Below are positions 371 through 6,420 of a DNA stretch of 6,448 bases, one piece after another. A program made the position numbers and the translations under genes. Each line of letters begins with the position of its first letter. The first letter of the stretch is position 1. The stretch is from Octopus sinensis (Eukaryota). Where the stretch lies: assembly GCF_006345805.1 (NCBI RefSeq), contig NW_021829336.1, positions 1 to 6,448 on the forward strand, in the 5' to 3' direction. Below the pieces are notes generated by a model. The model worked only from the letters and a program-made list of their open reading frames with translations. It did no database searches and had not been told where the DNA came from.

Positions 371-585
371 AAAGGCGACGAGGTGGCAGAACCGTTACCC
401 CACGAGGGAAAATGCTTAGTGGCATTTCATCTGTCTTTACGTTCTGAGTTCAAATTCCGCAAAGGTCAACTTTGCCTTTCATTATTTATTTCGGGTCGAT
501 AAAATAACTAGTTGAGCACTGGGGTTAATGTCACTGACTCAGCCCCTTCCTGAATTTGGTGGTTATGTTCCAAAATTTGATACCA
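371..585 (+). mobile_element. tRNA-derived SINE, copy 1 (Octopus-type, degraded)
   Basis: A-box-like TGGCAGAACCGTT (384-396) and B-box GTTCAAATTCC (448-458) with Pol III type-2 spacing. Clearly homologous to the adjacent copy at 602-800 (shared GTTCTGAGTTCAAATTCCGC, GGTCRACTTTGC.TTTCAT). Resembles an abundant Octopus SINE as recalled; not database-checked. Confidence 0.75.
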
Positions 586-601
586 GTGTTTCATTCACTA
601 C

Positions 602-800
602 AAAAGGCGGCGCGCTGGCAGAATCGTTAAAACCGGAGAAAATACTCAACGACATTTCATCCATCCTCGCGTTCTGAGTTCAAATTCCGCCGAGGTCGAC
701 TTTGCTTTTCATTTCCTTCGGGGTCAATAGAATGAGTACCAATCAAAAACTAGACTCGATGTAATCGACTAACGCTTTCTTCAAAATCAATCGGCTGGCA
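602..800 (+). mobile_element. tRNA-derived SINE, copy 2 of the same family (degraded, 3' end approximate)
   Basis: A-box-like TGGCAGAATCGTT (616-628) and B-box GTTCAAATTCC (678-688). Collinear with 371-585 at an offset of about 230 bp. Confidence 0.75.
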
Positions 801-1846: not shown

Positions 1847-1912
1847 TATATGTGCGTGTGTGTATATGTGTGTGCATCGATGTAGGTATATAAATACTTT
1901 ATTGCATATATG

Positions 1913-1943
<31 letters not shown>

Positions 1944-2042
1944 GTACATCTATACATACATACATACACATATATAGCTATATATATGCGCATATATATA
2001 TTTTATACAAATGAAAATATGTATATATATGTGTGTATATGC

Positions 2043-2085
<43 letters not shown>

Positions 2086-2099
2086 CATTATATATTATA

Positions 2100-2139
<40 letters not shown>

Positions 2140-2192
2140 GTGATTGTGTACTGATATAAATATATATATACATATGTATATGTATATATATA

Positions 2193-2227
<35 letters not shown>

Positions 2228-2289
2228 GTGTGTGTGTGTGTATTTATAGATCTATATGTATATATGTATATATGTATATATATATATAC

Positions 2290-2327
<38 letters not shown>
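1847..2327. repeat. Compound, interrupted (TA)n/(TG)n/(CATA)n microsatellite
   Basis: Long TA runs with TG and CATA interruptions, seen directly. Confidence 0.95.
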
Positions 2328-2328
<1 letters not shown>

Positions 2329-2635
2329 TTAAATAACTTTAATGGAGTTAGACTTCATAATTATATATAATTCAAATATTCGTGTATATAAGTGTATACA
2401 TATATATATTAATGTTGGTGGGGGGGGGCTGTATGTGTATTATTTTTCTGGTCTTCTCCGTCTAAATATCCTTTTCCACAGCGTCATCTCTTCCACTGGT
2501 TTTTCTTTTATTTATTTCGCACCTAACATCTACTTAAATATAATCTACAAATTATATTCACATTTATAACAATAATAGTCGAGACAGAATTACAAATAGG
2601 CGGTCTTCAAACGGACACAAGCGTTCGCAGGGAAG

Positions 2636-2732
2636 TGTATATGTCTGCGAGTGTTTTTGTGTGTGTGTACATAGATATACATGGGTATGTATATATGGAC
2701 ATGCCTATCTATATATCCAGATATCCATACGT

Positions 2733-2763
<31 letters not shown>

Positions 2764-2781
2764 ATATGTATGTGTGTGTTG

Positions 2782-2854
<73 letters not shown>

Positions 2855-3136
2855 TATACATACATAGATATAATATATATACGTATATATACGTACCACA
2901 CACATATATATATATATACAGGCATATATGTATACATATACATTTAAATATGTCTGCAATTTTGAGTGTATGTGTGTGGGGGTGAGAAAGATGAGTGCGT
3001 GTGTGTATATATTGTATATATATATGTGTATATATATGTGTATGTATATATAATATATATATATATATATGTATATATATACATATATATATGTATATAT
3101 GTATATTATATATATATCTATATATATATATATATA
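2636..3136. repeat. Compound (TA)n/(TG)n/(CA)n microsatellite; left flank of the retrozyme insertion
   Basis: Seen directly. It includes a long pure (TA)n run around 2787-2848 and ends in (TA)n abutting 3137. Confidence 0.95.
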
Positions 3137-3259
3137 ATAACAATTTAGGAATGGCCTAGACAGGCCATTCGTCCACTAGAAAGAGCAGCCATAACTCCAA
3201 CCGCCAAGTAGTGTAATTCGGAAATAAGGTGAAAATTTAAAAACATTTACCCTAATTCA

Positions 3260-3360
3260 TCTTTATATACGATGCATCGTTTCAGTGTCTTTAATGATAG
3301 AACCAGCTTAATAAATTAAATAAGCTAGTCTACCATAGGTCACACTTCATCAGTAAAAGA
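3260..3360 (-). ncRNA. Type I hammerhead ribozyme, copy 1 (1-nt insertion in stem I; predicted cleavage 3268/3267)
   Basis: Minus strand: UCUUUUA-CUGAUGA (3353-3347)-AGUGU...ACACU-GAAA (3283-3280)-CGAUGCAUCG-UA|UAUAAAGA. Core intact; stem I has a single bulge and stem II has small indels. Confidence 0.8.
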
Positions 3361-3733
3361 AACCTGGGAGAGACGGATATATCGAGGCGACTGTATCAAT
3401 GCCTCGGGAATATCTGTCTTAAAATTTTCAAGACCAACGCATTCGCGCCAAACTTATCGGCAGCAAATATAAACTGCCGATTCAATCTCAGAATTAGTCA
3501 GAAAATTATCAATTAATCAATTTAGGGTAGCAAAAAATTCAGTAAAAATTTATCGCTACCAGCGGCCCAATGGAAAAGAGAAAATAGTCAAAGACTAAAT
3601 ATGTATAAATATACCAATTTAGGAATGGCCTAGACAGGCCATTCGTCCACTAGAAAGAGCAGCCATAACTCCAACCGCCAAGTAGTGTAATTCGGAAATA
3701 AGGTGAAAATTTAAAAACATTTACCCTAATTCA

Positions 3734-3834
3734 TCTTTTATACGATGCATCGTTTCAGTGTCTTTAATGATAGACCAGCTTAATTAAATTAAATTAAGCT
3801 AGTCTACCATAGGTCACACTTCATCAGTAAAAGA
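3734..3834 (-). ncRNA. Type I hammerhead ribozyme, copy 2 (predicted cleavage 3741/3740)
   Basis: Minus strand: stem I UCUUUUA/UAAAAGA (7 bp perfect), CUGAUGA (3827-3821), stem II base AGUGU/ACACU, GAAA, stem III CGAUGCAUCG, GUA cleavage triplet. Confidence 0.9.
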
Positions 3835-4207
3835 AACCTGGGAGAGACGGATATATCCGAGGCGACTGTATCAATGCCTCGGGAATATCTGTCTTAAAAT
3901 TTTCAAGACCAACGCATTCGCGCCAAACTTATCGGCAGCAATATAAACTGCCGATTCAATCTCAGAATTAGTCAGAAAATTATCAATTAATCAATTTAGG
4001 GTAGCAAAAAATTCAGTAAAAATTTATCGCTACCAGCGGCCCAATGGAAAAGAGAAAATAGTCAAAGACTAAATATGTATAAATATAACAATTTAGGAAT
4101 GGCCTAGACAGGCCATTCGTCCACTAGAAAGAGCAGCCATAACTCCAACCGCCAAGTAGTGTAATTCGGAAATAAGGTGAAAATTTAAAAACATTTACCC
4201 TAATTCA

Positions 4208-4308
4208 TCTTTTATACGATGCATCGTTTCAGTGTCTTTAATGATAGACCAGCTTAATTAAATTAAATTAAGCTAGTCTACCATAGGTCACACTTCATCA
4301 GTAAAAGA
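4208..4308 (-). ncRNA. Type I hammerhead ribozyme, copy 3 (predicted cleavage 4215/4214)
   Basis: Identical to copy 2; CUGAUGA at 4301-4295. Confidence 0.9.
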
Positions 4309-4683
4309 AACCTGGGAGAGACGGATATATCCGAGGCGACTGTATCAATGCTCGGGAATATCTGTCTTAAAATTTTCAAGACCAACGCATTCGCGCCAAA
4401 CTTATCGGCAGCAAATATAAACTGCCGATTCAATCTCAGAATTAGTCAGAAAATTATCAATTAATCAAATTAGGGTAGCAAAAAATTCAGTAAAAATTTA
4501 TCGCTACCAGCGGCCCAATGGAAAAGAGAAAATAGTCAAAGACTAAATATGTATAAATATAACAATTAGGAATGGCCTAGACAGGCCATTCGTCCACTAG
4601 AAAGCAGCAGCCATAACTCCAACCGCCAAGTAGTGTAATTCGGAAATAAGGTGAAAATTTAAAAACATTTACCCTAATTCATC

Positions 4684-5068
4684 TTTTAAGACAGATATTC
4701 CGAGGCATTGATACAGTCGCCTCGGATATATCCGTCTCTCCAGGTTTCTTTTACTGATGAAGTGTGACCTATGGTAGACTAGCTTAATTAATTTAATTAA
4801 GCTGGTCTATCATTAAAGACACTGAAACGATGCATCGTATAAAAGATGAATTAGGGTAAATGTTTTTAAATTTTCACCTTATTTCCGAATTACACTACTT
4901 GGCGGTTGGAGTTATGGCTGCTCTTTCTAGTGGACGAATGGCCTGTCTAGGCCATTCCTAAATTGTTGTATTTATACATATTTAGTCTTTGACTATTTTC
5001 TCTTTTCCATTGGGCCGCTGGTAGCGATAAATTTTTACTGAATTTTTTGCTACCCTAAATTGATTAAT
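4684..5068 (+). mobile_element. Inverted 385-bp partial copy of the retrozyme unit
   Basis: Reverse complement of 3986-4372 with about 4 differences. Joined to the array via shared TTTTA (4684-4688). Ends at ...TGATTAAT (5068), followed by (AT)n. Confidence 0.92.
4747..4846 (+). ncRNA. Type I hammerhead ribozyme, copy 4 (plus strand; predicted cleavage 4839/4840)
   Basis: TCTTTTA (4747-4753), CTGATGA (4754-4760), AGTGT (4761-4765) ... ACACT (4819-4823), GAAA (4824-4827), CGATGCATCG (4828-4837), TA (4838-4839) | TAAAAGA (4840-4846). Confidence 0.9.
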
Positions 5069-5090
5069 ATATATATATATACATACATAC
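5069..5090. repeat. (AT)n/(CATA)n microsatellite; right flank of the retrozyme insertion
   Basis: atatatatatatacatacatac immediately after the inverted arm. Confidence 0.9.
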
Positions 5091-5220
5091 GTGCATCTTA
5101 CATTAGTATAAATTAAATTTTTTCCCTCAAATCATTTATCTTCGCAGAGAACTCCTTAAAAATGGAAAGAACATAAATCATATTTTAATATTTAAAATAT
5201 AACTAAATATATTTCATTAT

Positions 5221-5400
5221 TTCTTACTCATCGATTCAGCCATCAGCCAGCGCCCACGCTGGGGCACCGACTTGAAGATTCCTTAATCGAGTGAATCGGC
5301 CCCGGTGTGTTTTATTGAATCGCTAGGTTAGCAAACAGTGGTTGTCGACGGACATAGGCACAAAGACATACACACAGTCACACACACAGATACATACAAG
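5221..5400 (-). mobile_element. Degraded SINE 3' portion with CA-rich internal segment
   Basis: GCTGGGGCACCGACTTGAAG, TAATCGAGTGAATCGGCCCC, GAATCGCTAGGTTA and GGTTGTC followed by a CA-rich tract match, in order, my recollection of the antisense strand of an Octopus SINE (possibly the same family as 1220-1280). Not database-checked. Confidence 0.45.
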
Positions 5401-5432
5401 GACGCAGTCAAATGATTGCAACAAGTATAAGA

Positions 5433-5464
5433 ATATATATATATATGTACAGTATGTATGTTTG

Positions 5465-5502
<38 letters not shown>
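5433..5502. repeat. (TA)n/(TG)n microsatellite
   Basis: Seen directly. Confidence 0.9.
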
Positions 5503-5503
<1 letters not shown>

Positions 5504-5506
5504 TTG

Positions 5507-5512
5507 TAGTTC

Positions 5513-5551
<39 letters not shown>

Positions 5552-5623
5552 TAGTAACAGTAGCAGCAGCAGCAGCAGCAGTAGTAGTAGTTAGTAGTAG
5601 TAGTAGTAGTAGTAGTAGCAATA
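5507..5623. repeat. Compound trinucleotide microsatellite (TAG)n-(CAG)n-(TAG)n
   Basis: TAG run from 5513, CAG run at about 5564-5581, then TAG again with one extra T. Confidence 0.95.
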
Positions 5624-5676
5624 ATGGATACAGAATATTGAATATACTGGAAACTTTAGTATATGGCATTTATGTG

Positions 5677-5896
5677 GTGTGTGTGTGTGTGTATTTATAT
5701 ATATATATATATACACCATATATATATATGTATATATACATATACAATATATTGTATATAAATATACATATATATTTATATATTATATATATATATTTAT
5801 ATATGTATATATATATTTTTTATTATATATATATGTATATTATTATAATATATATATTTATATATGTATATTATTATATTATTTTATATATATATA
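5677..5896. repeat. Degenerate (TG)n/(TA)n low-complexity tract
   Basis: Seen directly. Confidence 0.9.
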
Positions 5897-5985
5897 ACTT
5901 AGATAACTTTGATAGGTTTCGGCCAGTATAGGCCCAGGGCTACAGCCATTCCTGTAATTACACGCAACTTTCATGTTACTACAAC

Positions 5986-6017
<32 letters not shown>

Positions 6018-6108
6018 CATGTGTGTGTGTGTGTGTGGTGTGTGTGTGCGTACAGATAGATAGATAATACATACATACATGCATACATACATAGACAGAC
6101 AGACACAC
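5986..6108. repeat. Compound (TA)n-(TG)n-(GATA)n-(CATA)n-(GACA)n microsatellite
   Basis: Seen directly. Confidence 0.9.
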
Positions 6109-6154
6109 AAATTTGGGATATGTAAGATATTTATTTACATCATTTACGATGATG

Positions 6155-6420
6155 TATATATGTATGTATATCGAAATATGTCTATATCGATAAATATGTG
6201 AGTGTGTGTGTGTTAGTGTGTGTGCGTGTGTGTGTGTGTTTGCTTGTGTTTGTGTGTGTGTTTGTTCCTGTGTGTGTGTGTATTTGTATGTGTGTGTGTG
6301 TGTGCTTGTGTAAACTGAGTGAATTAGTTACAGAGATGTGTGTGATTGTGTGTACGAGACTGCGCGTATTTGCTTGTATCCGCGTGTGTATATCTGCATA
6401 TATATATATATGTATGTAGG
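6155..6420. repeat. Degenerate (TG)n-rich low-complexity tract
   Basis: Seen directly. Confidence 0.85.

What the first reader, a model, noticed from the sequence alone, without database searches (positions are those of the whole stretch)
3137..4688. 474-bp tandem repeat is a hammerhead-ribozyme retrozyme, probably from a cephalopod
Seen: every complete unit has a full Type I hammerhead on the minus strand. The core (CUGAUGA...GAAA...GUA) is intact, all three helices pair, and there is no ORF. Established: non-LTR retrozymes in animals (e.g. newt/axolotl satellite 2, corals, mussels) are tandem short non-coding units with Type I hammerheads. They are transcribed as multimers, self-cleave to monomers and accumulate as circRNAs. 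Inference: this locus should give 473-474-nt linear and circular RNAs starting UAAAAGAUGAAUU. The monomer is longer than the roughly 170-400 nt I recall for animal retrozymes. I know of no described cephalopod family, but cannot check that.
Basis: partly seen in the sequence, partly recalled or inferred. Interest (0 to 1): 0.92.

Follow-up and report, generated by a model that had tools for sequence, protein, structure and literature searches.

The report
Octopus hammerhead-ribozyme retrozyme repeat
A 474-base non-coding repeat in what is almost certainly octopus DNA carries a complete self-cleaving hammerhead ribozyme motif and is laid out like an insertion made by a Penelope-like retroelement, so it is a new member of the known animal "retrozyme" class, not a new kind of element.

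Summary
The repeat is real: period 473-474 bp, 3.27 units on the minus strand (3139-4688), about 99% identical. The type I hammerhead (HHR) motif is also real. All invariant core bases are present, with helices of 7, 5 and 4 bp, against about 7e-5 expected by chance per unit. Three corrections apply. (1) One of the three minus-strand ribozymes (3268-3353) has a bulged helix I. (2) The element extends to 5073 as an inverted, 5'-truncated copy on the plus strand, carrying a fourth intact ribozyme (4754-4839). (3) No Rfam hammerhead model detects the motif, most likely because helix II is 64 nt long and starts with A-U instead of G-C. The minus-strand array begins exactly at the predicted cleavage site. 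It abuts the inverted copy through a 5-nt microhomology, and both outer ends run into (TA)n. That is the published insertion pattern of Penelope-like elements (PLEs). Flanking SINEs match only Octopus records. The unit has no ORF and no protein homologues, and its RNA is strongly structured on the ribozyme strand only. The 474-nt length has precedent (pDo500 at about 500 bp; retrozymes of 51-972 bp). Self-cleavage, circular RNA and copy number could not be tested. Verdict: new member of a known kind, moderate interest.

The parts
3139..4688 (-). Tandem array of 3.27 retrozyme units: m1 4688-4215, m2 4214-3741, m3 3740-3268, partial m4 3267-3139. Its 5' end on its own strand (4688) is U1.1, the first base after the predicted cleavage site.
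   Evidence: TRF; unit alignment; BLAST of the unit against the window
4208..4308 (-). Hammerhead 1, intact. Helix I 5' strand 4308-4302; core CUGAUGA 4301-4295; helix II 4294-4231 (5 bp, a 5x5 internal loop, a 19-bp hairpin); GAA 4230-4228; helix III 4227-4216 (4 bp plus a UGCA loop, a 12-nt palindrome); A17 at 4215; cleavage between 4215 and 4214; helix I 3' strand 4214-4208.
3734..3834 (-). Hammerhead 2, intact and identical in sequence to hammerhead 1. C3 at 3827; cleavage between 3741 and 3740.
3259..3360 (-). Hammerhead 3. The core is intact, but helix I is interrupted by a 1-nt insertion (GTATATAAAG) and the helix II hairpin has indels. It is probably weakened. C3 at 3353; cleavage between 3268 and 3267.
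4684..5073 (+). Inverted, 5'-truncated copy (unit positions about 319-474, then 1-233), joined head to head to the 5' end of the array.
   Evidence: inverted repeats I1-I9
4747..4846 (+). Hammerhead 4, intact, on the plus strand. C3 at 4754; cleavage between 4839 and 4840.
4684..4688 (.). Head-to-head junction: a 5-nt microhomology (TTTTA) shared by the two copies. Homology of the minus-strand copy stops exactly at 4688, the cleavage site.
   Evidence: read from the sequence
2743..3138 (.). Left-hand (TA)n-rich microsatellite, the presumed target. The array's 3' end (unit positions about 129-145, itself TA-rich) merges into it.
   Evidence: TRF
5074..5092 (.). Right-hand remnant of the (TA)n target, abutting the 3' end of the inverted copy.

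Best explanation
This is one insertion of a non-autonomous, non-coding retroelement of the animal non-LTR retrozyme class, sitting in an octopod genome. Proposed life cycle: the array is transcribed on the ribozyme strand as a multimer. The type I hammerhead cuts after GUA. It may act alone, since it has a 4-bp helix III, but more efficiently as a double hammerhead, in which two copies form a 12-bp helix III from the palindrome ACGAUGCAUCGU. Cutting yields 474-nt monomers with 5'-OH and 2',3'-cyclic phosphate ends that helix I holds side by side, and a host RNA ligase circularises them. Monomeric, multimeric or circular RNA is then copied back into DNA by the reverse transcriptase and GIY-YIG endonuclease of an autonomous Penelope-like element.

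At this locus the break was in a (TA)n microsatellite, and both DNA ends primed cDNA synthesis at AU-rich internal sites of the RNA. One cDNA ran 3.27 units to an RNA 5' end created by the ribozyme. The other ran 0.82 units. They joined head to head through 5 nt of microhomology.

Shown here: the anatomy, the statistics, the folds, the junction positions and the host. Inferred: catalysis, circular RNA, the PLE partner and the twin-priming mechanism.
For: Complete HHR core and three helices in 3 of 4 copies, far beyond chance. The unconstrained MFE of the linear monomer forms helices I, II and III on its own. The active fold lies 1 kcal/mol above the MFE of the isolated ribozyme, and a dimer gains 14.7 kcal/mol through a 12-bp intermolecular helix III. 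A palindromic helix III/loop 3 is the hallmark of metazoan type I and PLE hammerheads (PMC4209133). The circular monomer folds to -146.8 kcal/mol, z = -7.7, 62% paired. The antisense circle reaches only -114.4, and the sense fold contains 17 G.U pairs, so the structure is specific to the ribozyme strand. There is no ORF and no protein homologue. GC is 36%. The ribozyme is present in one polarity only. The architecture is a tandem array plus an inverted 5'-truncated copy at the 5' end, in a (TA)n target. This is the published PLE insertion pattern (PMC8557442). Hammerhead pairs 100-700 bp apart on opposite strands have been reported for PLE-related motifs. The array's 5' end coincides with the cleavage site. 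For a random breakpoint the chance is about 1/474 per end, or roughly 1% allowing for the microhomology. The two 3' ends lie at different internal positions (about 130-145 and 233), as expected for a template without a fixed 3' end. The host lineage has recently active PLEs: 31 families in O. vulgaris (PMC13282606). Retrozymes have been linked to PLE pLTRs (bioRxiv 10.64898/2026.07.22.740005).
Against: No Rfam hammerhead covariance model matches at any threshold. The base pair 10.1-11.1 is A-U, not the highly conserved G-C. Natural exceptions do exist: compensatory changes at these positions in Dolichopoda and a U.U mismatch in axolotl HHR_Amex2. Helix III forms with a probability of only about 0.13 in the isolated monomer. 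The usual loop 1-loop 2 contacts cannot be recognised, because helix II carries a 5x5 internal loop and a 19-bp hairpin instead of a small loop. No second locus or related species could be found. So there is no covariation evidence, no copy number and no proof of mobility. The four copies are about 99% identical and count as a single observation. The cleavage-site junction is likewise one case. No target-site duplication can be read in a microsatellite. No PLE coding sequence lies in the window.
Confidence: 0.75

Rival explanations
1. It is an ordinary satellite or tandem duplication grown by unequal crossing-over or replication slippage. The hammerhead is then a dead relic, or it never functioned.
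For: Rfam models do not match. A-U at 10.1-11.1 departs from the consensus. Only one locus is available, and the copies are near-identical, so no selection can be shown. One copy already has a damaged helix I.
Against: The full descriptor has a chance rate of about 7e-5 per unit. All invariant bases are intact in four copies. The 12-nt palindrome sits exactly at helix III. RNA structure is strong and strand-specific. Unequal crossing-over does not explain an inverted 5'-truncated copy whose partner begins exactly at the cleavage site.
Confidence: 0.1
2. It is part of an autonomous Penelope-like element (its pseudo-LTR region), not a separate non-autonomous retrozyme.
For: PLE pLTRs carry hammerheads and form tandem/inverted structures. 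PLE hammerheads tend to have a larger helix II.
Against: The repeated unit is 474 bp, not a 3-4 kb element. No ORF lies in or next to it: six-frame Pfam of the left flank finds nothing, the right flank is microsatellite and SINE-like sequence, and the unit's peptides have no homologues. PLE min-HHRs have little or no helix III, whereas this one has 4 bp plus a tetraloop.
Confidence: 0.08
3. The tandem/inverted layout is an assembly artefact of a repeat-rich region, and the biology of the junctions is not real.
For: Most differences between copies are 1-nt indels in homopolymer or AT runs, a typical long-read error pattern. Craig et al. note that PLE structures often cause assembly problems.
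Against: The junctions are clean and sit at meaningful positions (cleavage site, microhomology, TA-rich sites). An artefact would not create the ribozyme itself.
Confidence: 0.05

Closest known systems
Non-LTR retrozymes of invertebrates, e.g. Mytilus galloprovincialis repeats of about 350-390 bp (Cervera & de la Pena, NAR 2020, PMC7229834)
   Same: Mollusc host. Short non-coding tandem units with low GC. One type I hammerhead per unit, in one polarity. Highly self-paired RNA. The archetypal loop 1-loop 2 nucleotides are not recognisable, as is also reported for the mussel ribozymes.
   Different: The unit is longer (474 nt). Helix II is 64 nt, with an internal loop and a 19-bp hairpin. 10.1-11.1 is A-U. 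No sequence similarity could be tested. Expression and circular RNA are shown for the mussel, not here.
Newt/axolotl satellite 2 retrozymes (about 330-350 bp), which act as double hammerheads
   Same: Tandem units with a type I HHR. Helix III with a palindromic loop, favouring a dimeric active form. Here the predicted gain is 14.7 kcal/mol with a 12-bp helix III.
   Different: The amphibian helix III has 1-2 bp and conserved loop-loop contacts. Here it has 4 bp plus a UGCA loop, so monomeric cleavage is also plausible.
Dolichopoda cave-cricket pDo500 satellite (about 500 bp) with a hammerhead (PMC2837043)
   Same: Comparable unit length. Single- and double-hammerhead modes have both been proposed. 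Natural variation at positions 10.1/11.1.
   Different: Insect host. The 49-nt ribozyme has short helices. Activity and conservation are documented across 12 species there, and not here.
Hammerheads in pseudo-LTRs of Penelope-like elements, and the PLE insertion architecture (PMC4209133, PMC8557442)
   Same: Partial tandems. An inverted 5'-truncated copy abutting the 5' end. (TA)n microsatellite targets (reported for Naiad). A larger helix II. A palindromic helix III region. Hammerhead pairs on opposite strands 100-700 bp apart.
   Different: No RT or GIY-YIG ORF. The unit is 474 bp. PLE min-HHRs lack a real helix III and keep G10.1-C11.1, with an extra base after A9. No 30-40 bp 'tail' was identified.

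Membership tests
Hammerhead ribozyme, type I | Invariant core: C3 U4 G5 A6 N7 G8 A9, G12 A13 A14, the A15.1-U16.1 pair, and H17 (not G) at the cleavage site | tested here: met
   CUGAUGA ... GAA A ... U A present in all 4 copies
Hammerhead ribozyme, type I | Three helices around the core, with helix I open and helices II and III closed (type I topology) | tested here: met
   Helices of 7/5/4 bp in 3 copies; the 4th has a bulged helix I. The helices are recovered by unconstrained folding.
Hammerhead ribozyme, type I | G10.1-C11.1 at the base of helix II (highly conserved, not invariant) | tested here: not met
   A-U here. Natural exceptions are documented, so this lowers the expected activity without excluding membership.
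Hammerhead ribozyme, type I | Match to the curated Rfam hammerhead covariance models (an operational criterion, not a defining one) | tested here: not met
   No hammerhead family even at E<=10 on the 136-nt segment. My explanation is the 64-nt helix II, which I could not verify with a trimmed construct.
Hammerhead ribozyme, type I | Covariation supporting the helices | tested here: inconclusive
   Only 4 near-identical copies and no relatives found
Hammerhead ribozyme, type I | Site-specific self-cleavage | not testable with these tools
   Indirect only: the array's 5' end coincides with the predicted cleavage site
Metazoan non-LTR retrozyme | Short tandem DNA repeats (150-450 bp in PMC7229834; 51-972 bp in the 2026 preprint) of low GC, without LTR, PBS or PPT | tested here: met
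   474-bp unit, 3.27 plus 0.82 copies, 36% GC, no terminal repeats other than the units themselves. PBS and PPT were not searched for specifically.
Metazoan non-LTR retrozyme | Non-coding, with one type I HHR per unit | tested here: met
Metazoan non-LTR retrozyme | Highly self-paired RNA | tested here: met
   z = -8.0 (linear) and -7.7 (circular), 62% paired
Metazoan non-LTR retrozyme | Expressed as linear and circular monomer RNAs | not testable with these tools
   No transcriptome access
Metazoan non-LTR retrozyme | Multicopy and dispersed in the genome (evidence of mobility) | not testable with these tools
   No cephalopod genome could be searched by DNA. The 20 kb of O. vulgaris DNA fetched holds no copy. 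The insertion architecture is the only indirect evidence.
Autonomous Penelope-like element | An ORF encoding a PLE-type RT and GIY-YIG endonuclease | tested here: not met
   No ORF in the unit, no Pfam domain in the left flank, and a right flank made of microsatellite and SINE-like sequence
Autonomous Penelope-like element | Insertion architecture: partial tandem plus an inverted 5'-truncated copy at the 5' end, with microsatellite target bias | tested here: met
   compared with the description in PMC8557442
Plant LTR retrozyme | Type III hammerheads inside two LTRs, with PBS and PPT and 4-bp TSDs | tested here: not met
   The hammerhead is type I, there are no LTRs, and the units are simple tandems
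Viroid-like or HDV-like exogenous circular RNA | Ribozymes in both polarities and/or a coding region; not integrated in host DNA | tested here: not met
   HHR in one polarity only; embedded between host microsatellites and octopus SINEs

The most novel reading that the evidence does not exclude
This locus may preserve a single PLE-mediated, twin-primed retrotransposition of a ribozyme-processed retrozyme RNA. The features are a 5' end at the cleavage site, an inverted 5'-truncated partner, microhomology joins and a (TA)n target. If the same footprint recurs at many octopus loci, it would be direct structural evidence for the still hypothetical retrozyme-PLE partnership, and for hammerhead cleavage in vivo. 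The ribozyme would also be an extended-helix-II variant that Rfam cannot see. In that case cephalopod genomes, and other genomes annotated with Rfam, could hold a sizeable unannotated population of hammerheads and small circular RNAs.
Probability: 0.3. Interest if true: 0.55.

Novelty: new member of a known kind. Interest (0 to 1): 0.38.

Why it matters
Retrozymes are a recently recognised source of abundant small circular RNAs in animals, and their mobilisation by Penelope-like elements is proposed but not demonstrated. A cephalopod family would extend the known host range within molluscs. I found no paper describing one; the only record was a count of Rfam hammerhead hits in the giant squid.

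The specific value of this locus is twofold. First, it shows a hammerhead that passes the structural descriptor but escapes every Rfam model, a warning for annotation pipelines. Second, its junctions read like a footprint of ribozyme cleavage followed by PLE-style integration. That makes the partnership testable by a simple genome-wide survey of insertion ends. None of this changes the current picture of what retrozymes are.

Tried and rejected
1. Rfam cmscan, three ways (whole window at E<=1; repeat at E<=10; 136-nt ribozyme at E<=10): no hammerhead family. The only hits were weak miRNA-like matches to the helix II hairpin and to the TA/TG microsatellites, all far below gathering scores.
2. 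Concatenated stop-free peptides of the unit against 5.8 billion proteins, hoping that gene callers had emitted spurious ORFs from related repeats: no hit.
3. Exact DNA pattern scans of the metagenome collection (two patterns) and the viral contigs: no hit. These collections are not expected to hold cephalopod DNA, so the negatives say little.
4. A literature string search for the SINE core: no hit.
5. The 20 kb of O. vulgaris chromosome fetched through a SINE-derived protein: no retrozyme copy, no hammerhead under Rfam or a relaxed descriptor, no PLE ORF.
6. Six-frame Pfam scan of the left flank for RT or endonuclease remnants: nothing.
7. tRNA scan for the SINE heads: nothing.
8. I considered querying for an octopus PLE protein in order to compare its pLTR hammerhead. 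I dropped the idea because I had no reliable query sequence and the chance of hitting the right one among about 31 families was low.
9. A hammerhead on the opposite polarity, and a circular open reading frame (474 = 3 x 158): neither is present.
10. I looked by eye for Pol III A/B boxes in the unit and found no convincing match. This is not a tool result.
Full report
1. THE OBSERVATION

Tandem Repeats Finder reports a 474-bp period with 3.3 copies and 98% matches at 3124-4688. Read on the minus strand and phased at the predicted cleavage site, the array consists of m1 4688-4215 (474 nt), m2 4214-3741 (474), m3 3740-3268 (473) and a partial m4 3267-3139 (129).

The string CTGATGA-N(40-70)-GAAA-N(8-14)-GTA occurs four times in the window, against 0.01 expected from dinucleotide shuffles. 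I also wrote a stricter descriptor that requires helix I of at least 5 bp, helix II of at least 4 bp and helix III of at least 3 bp, with U16.1 and a non-G at position 17. In 20 Mb of first-order Markov sequence generated from the unit's own dinucleotide transitions it gives 0.15 hits per Mb on both strands, or about 7e-5 per 474-nt unit. The motif is therefore not a chance match.

All invariant core positions are present: C3 U4 G5 A6 U7 G8 A9, G12 A13 A14, A15.1-U16.1 and A17. No frame is open: the longest stop-free stretch in a trimer of the unit is 47 aa, and there is one 51-aa ORF in m1 only.

(a) Only two of the three minus-strand ribozymes pass the descriptor. The one at 3268-3353 has a T inserted two bases into the 3' strand of helix I (GTATATAAAG), which leaves a bulge, and it has indels in the helix II hairpin.

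(b) The element does not stop at 4688. A partial copy in the opposite orientation occupies 4684-5073 on the plus strand (unit positions about 319-474, then 1-233). It carries a fourth, intact ribozyme at 4754-4839.

(d) The 474-nt length is not unusual. The Dolichopoda pDo500 hammerhead satellite is about 500 bp (PMC2837043). The defining retrozyme paper gives 150-450 bp for the repeats (PMC7229834). A 2026 preprint reports consensus lengths of 51-972 bp.

3. ANATOMY OF THE RIBOZYME

Helix I has 7 contiguous pairs (UCUUUUA/UAAAAGA). After an asymmetric internal loop comes a distal CCC/GGG extension.

Helix II is 64 nt long. It has 5 bp at the core (AGUGU/ACACU), a 5x5 internal loop, and a 19-bp hairpin with two G.U pairs and a 6-nt loop. 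The pair next to the core is A10.1-U11.1 instead of the highly conserved G-C. Natural departures at this position are known: compensatory changes in Dolichopoda and a U.U mismatch in axolotl HHR_Amex2.

Helix III has 4 bp with a UGCA loop, and the whole segment ACGAUGCAUCGU is a 12-nt palindrome.

My explanation for the Rfam failure is the roughly 50-nt insertion in helix II, together with the A-U pair and the atypical helix III.

4. ENERGETICS

The unconstrained MFE of the linear 474-nt monomer (-152.1 kcal/mol, z = -8.0) forms helices I, II and III on its own, and helix I brings the two ends together.

For the isolated 138-nt ribozyme, the best structure containing the active pairs lies 1.0 kcal/mol above the MFE. 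The competitor pairs UGAUG of the core with CAUCG of helix III. Pair probabilities in helices I and II run from 0.74 to 0.98 (most at 0.83 or above), whereas those of helix III are only about 0.13.

Two copies together gain 14.7 kcal/mol over two monomers by forming a 12-bp intermolecular helix III with swapped helices I. This is the double-hammerhead geometry described for newt satellite 2 and proposed for most metazoan type I and PLE hammerheads, whose signature is a palindromic helix III/loop 3 (PMC4209133). I therefore expect cleavage mainly in multimeric transcripts, with some monomeric activity possible because helix III is longer here than in amphibians.

The circular monomer folds to -146.8 kcal/mol (z = -7.7, 62% paired) and keeps helices II and III. 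The antisense circle reaches only -114.4 kcal/mol. The sense fold has 17 G.U pairs among 146, and the mirrored structure is 24 kcal/mol worse on the antisense strand. The structure is thus a property of the ribozyme-strand RNA, not of the DNA.

5. ARCHITECTURE OF THE INSERTION

The minus-strand array and the plus-strand copy are joined head to head. Homology of the minus-strand copy ends at 4688, which is U1.1, the first base after the cleavage site. The next base (4689) departs from the unit. Homology of the plus-strand copy begins at 4684. The two copies therefore share the 5-nt microhomology TTTTA. For a random breakpoint the chance of ending exactly there is about 1/474 per end, and roughly 1% if the microhomology window and both copies are allowed for. 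This is a single case noticed after the fact.

The two outer (3') ends lie at different internal positions of the unit. The array ends at about unit positions 129-145, inside the unit's own TA-rich stretch TTATATTTATACATATTT, which blends into the (TA)n microsatellite at 2743-3138. The inverted copy ends at position 233 (…GATTAAT) against a short (TA)n remnant at 5074-5092.

Craig et al. [quoted passage not shown] They name (TA)n microsatellites as preferred targets of Naiad PLEs. Cervera and de la Pena noted hammerhead pairs 100-700 bp apart on opposite strands.

The locus fits that pattern point for point. The exceptions are that no 30-40 bp tail was recognised, and no target-site duplication can be read inside a microsatellite.

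6. HOST

Windows 371-525 and 603-741 hold two copies of a SINE that are 79% identical to each other. I recognised it from memory as an octopus SINE and then tested that.

Peptides translated from it hit only two proteins among 5.8 billion: a hypothetical protein of Octopus vulgaris and a protein of O. bimaculoides, through their SINE-derived segments. The O. vulgaris locus (GCA_951406725.2, OX597819.1) matches both SINE copies at 80% DNA identity. It has the same TA/TG-microsatellite texture as the window.

An octopod host is well supported. The species is not determined.

In O. vulgaris, SINEs make up 11.6% of the genome, and 31 PLE families with 336 insertions are classed as recently active (PMC13282606). 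A candidate autonomous partner therefore exists in the lineage.

7. MECHANISM PROPOSED

Shown: the anatomy, the statistics, the folds, the junction positions and the host.

Inferred:
- The ribozyme strand is transcribed as multimers.
- Self-cleavage after GUA occurs mostly through double hammerheads.
- A host RNA ligase circularises the 474-nt monomers, whose ends are held together by helix I.
- A PLE RT/endonuclease reverse-transcribes the RNA at a break in (TA)n.
- Both DNA ends prime at AU-rich internal sites of a multimeric or circular template.
- One cDNA runs off at a ribozyme-made 5' end after 3.27 units, and the other stops after 0.82 units.
- The two join by microhomology.

The different 3' ends and the unit-phased 5' end are what this model predicts. 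Unequal crossing-over does not predict them.

8. COMPARISON WITH WHAT IS KNOWN, AND NOVELTY

The element meets every testable criterion of the metazoan non-LTR retrozyme class (PMC7229834). It is not an autonomous PLE, since it has no ORF and the flank has no Pfam domain. It is not a plant LTR retrozyme, since the hammerhead is type I and there are no LTRs. It is not a viroid-like agent, since it has one polarity and is integrated among host repeats.

Retrozymes are already described in molluscs (mussel) and "from molluscs to arthropods". In addition, 235 Rfam hammerhead-1 hits were counted in the giant squid genome (PMC6962438). I found no paper describing a cephalopod retrozyme. The two octopus/cephalopod repeat papers I read mention no ribozyme.

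This is therefore a new member of a known kind, with two points of added interest. Its hammerhead has a long helix II and is invisible to Rfam. Its insertion footprint links ribozyme cleavage to PLE-style integration.

9. LIMITS

No cephalopod genome or transcriptome could be searched by nucleotide sequence. Copy number, dispersion, covariation, expression and circularity are all untested.

The four copies differ by about 3 substitutions and about 12 single-base indels in 1940 nt. Several further apparent substitutions are alignment shifts around indels. The indels sit in homopolymer or AT runs and may be assembly errors, so even the bulge in the third ribozyme should be confirmed on reads.

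Confidence that this is a genuine retrozyme-class element: 0.75. Interest: 0.38.

Noticed in passing
window 371-525 and 603-741 (+): Two adjacent direct copies of an octopus SINE, 79% identical to each other and about 80% identical to a copy on O. vulgaris chromosome OX597819.1. SINE-derived peptides also appear inside annotated Octopus 'proteins' (P0001, P0002), i.e. probable annotation artefacts or exonised SINEs.
   Followed up: yes
window about 5230-5430: A GC-richer segment (…GCCAGCGCCCACGCTGGGGCACCGAC…GGACGCAGTCAAATGATTGCAACAAG…) that I recall as resembling another octopus SINE family in reverse orientation. Only 5397-5484 matched the O. vulgaris locus (80%), and that match partly overlaps microsatellite sequence.
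   Followed up: partly
window 1903-3136, 5433-6311: Dense (TA)n, (TG)n, (TAG)n and compound microsatellites. They produce dozens of sub-threshold Rfam 'miRNA' hits (mir-297, mir-3149, mir-466 and others), all far below gathering scores. These are artefacts of simple repeats.
   Followed up: yes
window 4215-5073: The head-to-head copies form inverted repeats up to 286 nt long at 99% complementarity. A transcript crossing the junction would fold into long double-stranded RNA, a plausible substrate for ADAR editing or small-RNA pathways in an octopus. This is pure speculation.
   Followed up: no
window 3139-5073: About 12 of the 15 or so real differences between copies are single-base indels in homopolymer or AT runs. 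This looks more like long-read consensus error than mutation, so fine differences between copies, including the helix I bulge at 3266, need read-level confirmation.
   Followed up: partly
window 4231-4294 (-) and equivalents: The 19-bp AU-rich hairpin inside helix II has two G.U pairs, so it is better paired in the ribozyme-strand RNA than in the antisense. Three of its four copies differ only in or next to the loop; the third copy (in unit m3) also has an inserted base in the 3' arm of the stem. Its role is unknown: a tertiary contact through the 5x5 internal loop, a protein-binding site, or a later palindromic insertion.
   Followed up: partly
window 3741-4214: The unit length 474 is 3 x 158, which would allow an endless ORF on a circle, but all six frames are closed.
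   Followed up: yes
L001 2185-2490 (+) and 4139-4954 (-): In the O. vulgaris locus the same roughly 90-aa ORF start (MLSLIARAKNPGNSCLSV…) appears twice in inverted orientation around a microsatellite block, which indicates an inverted repeat of an unidentified element.
   Followed up: no
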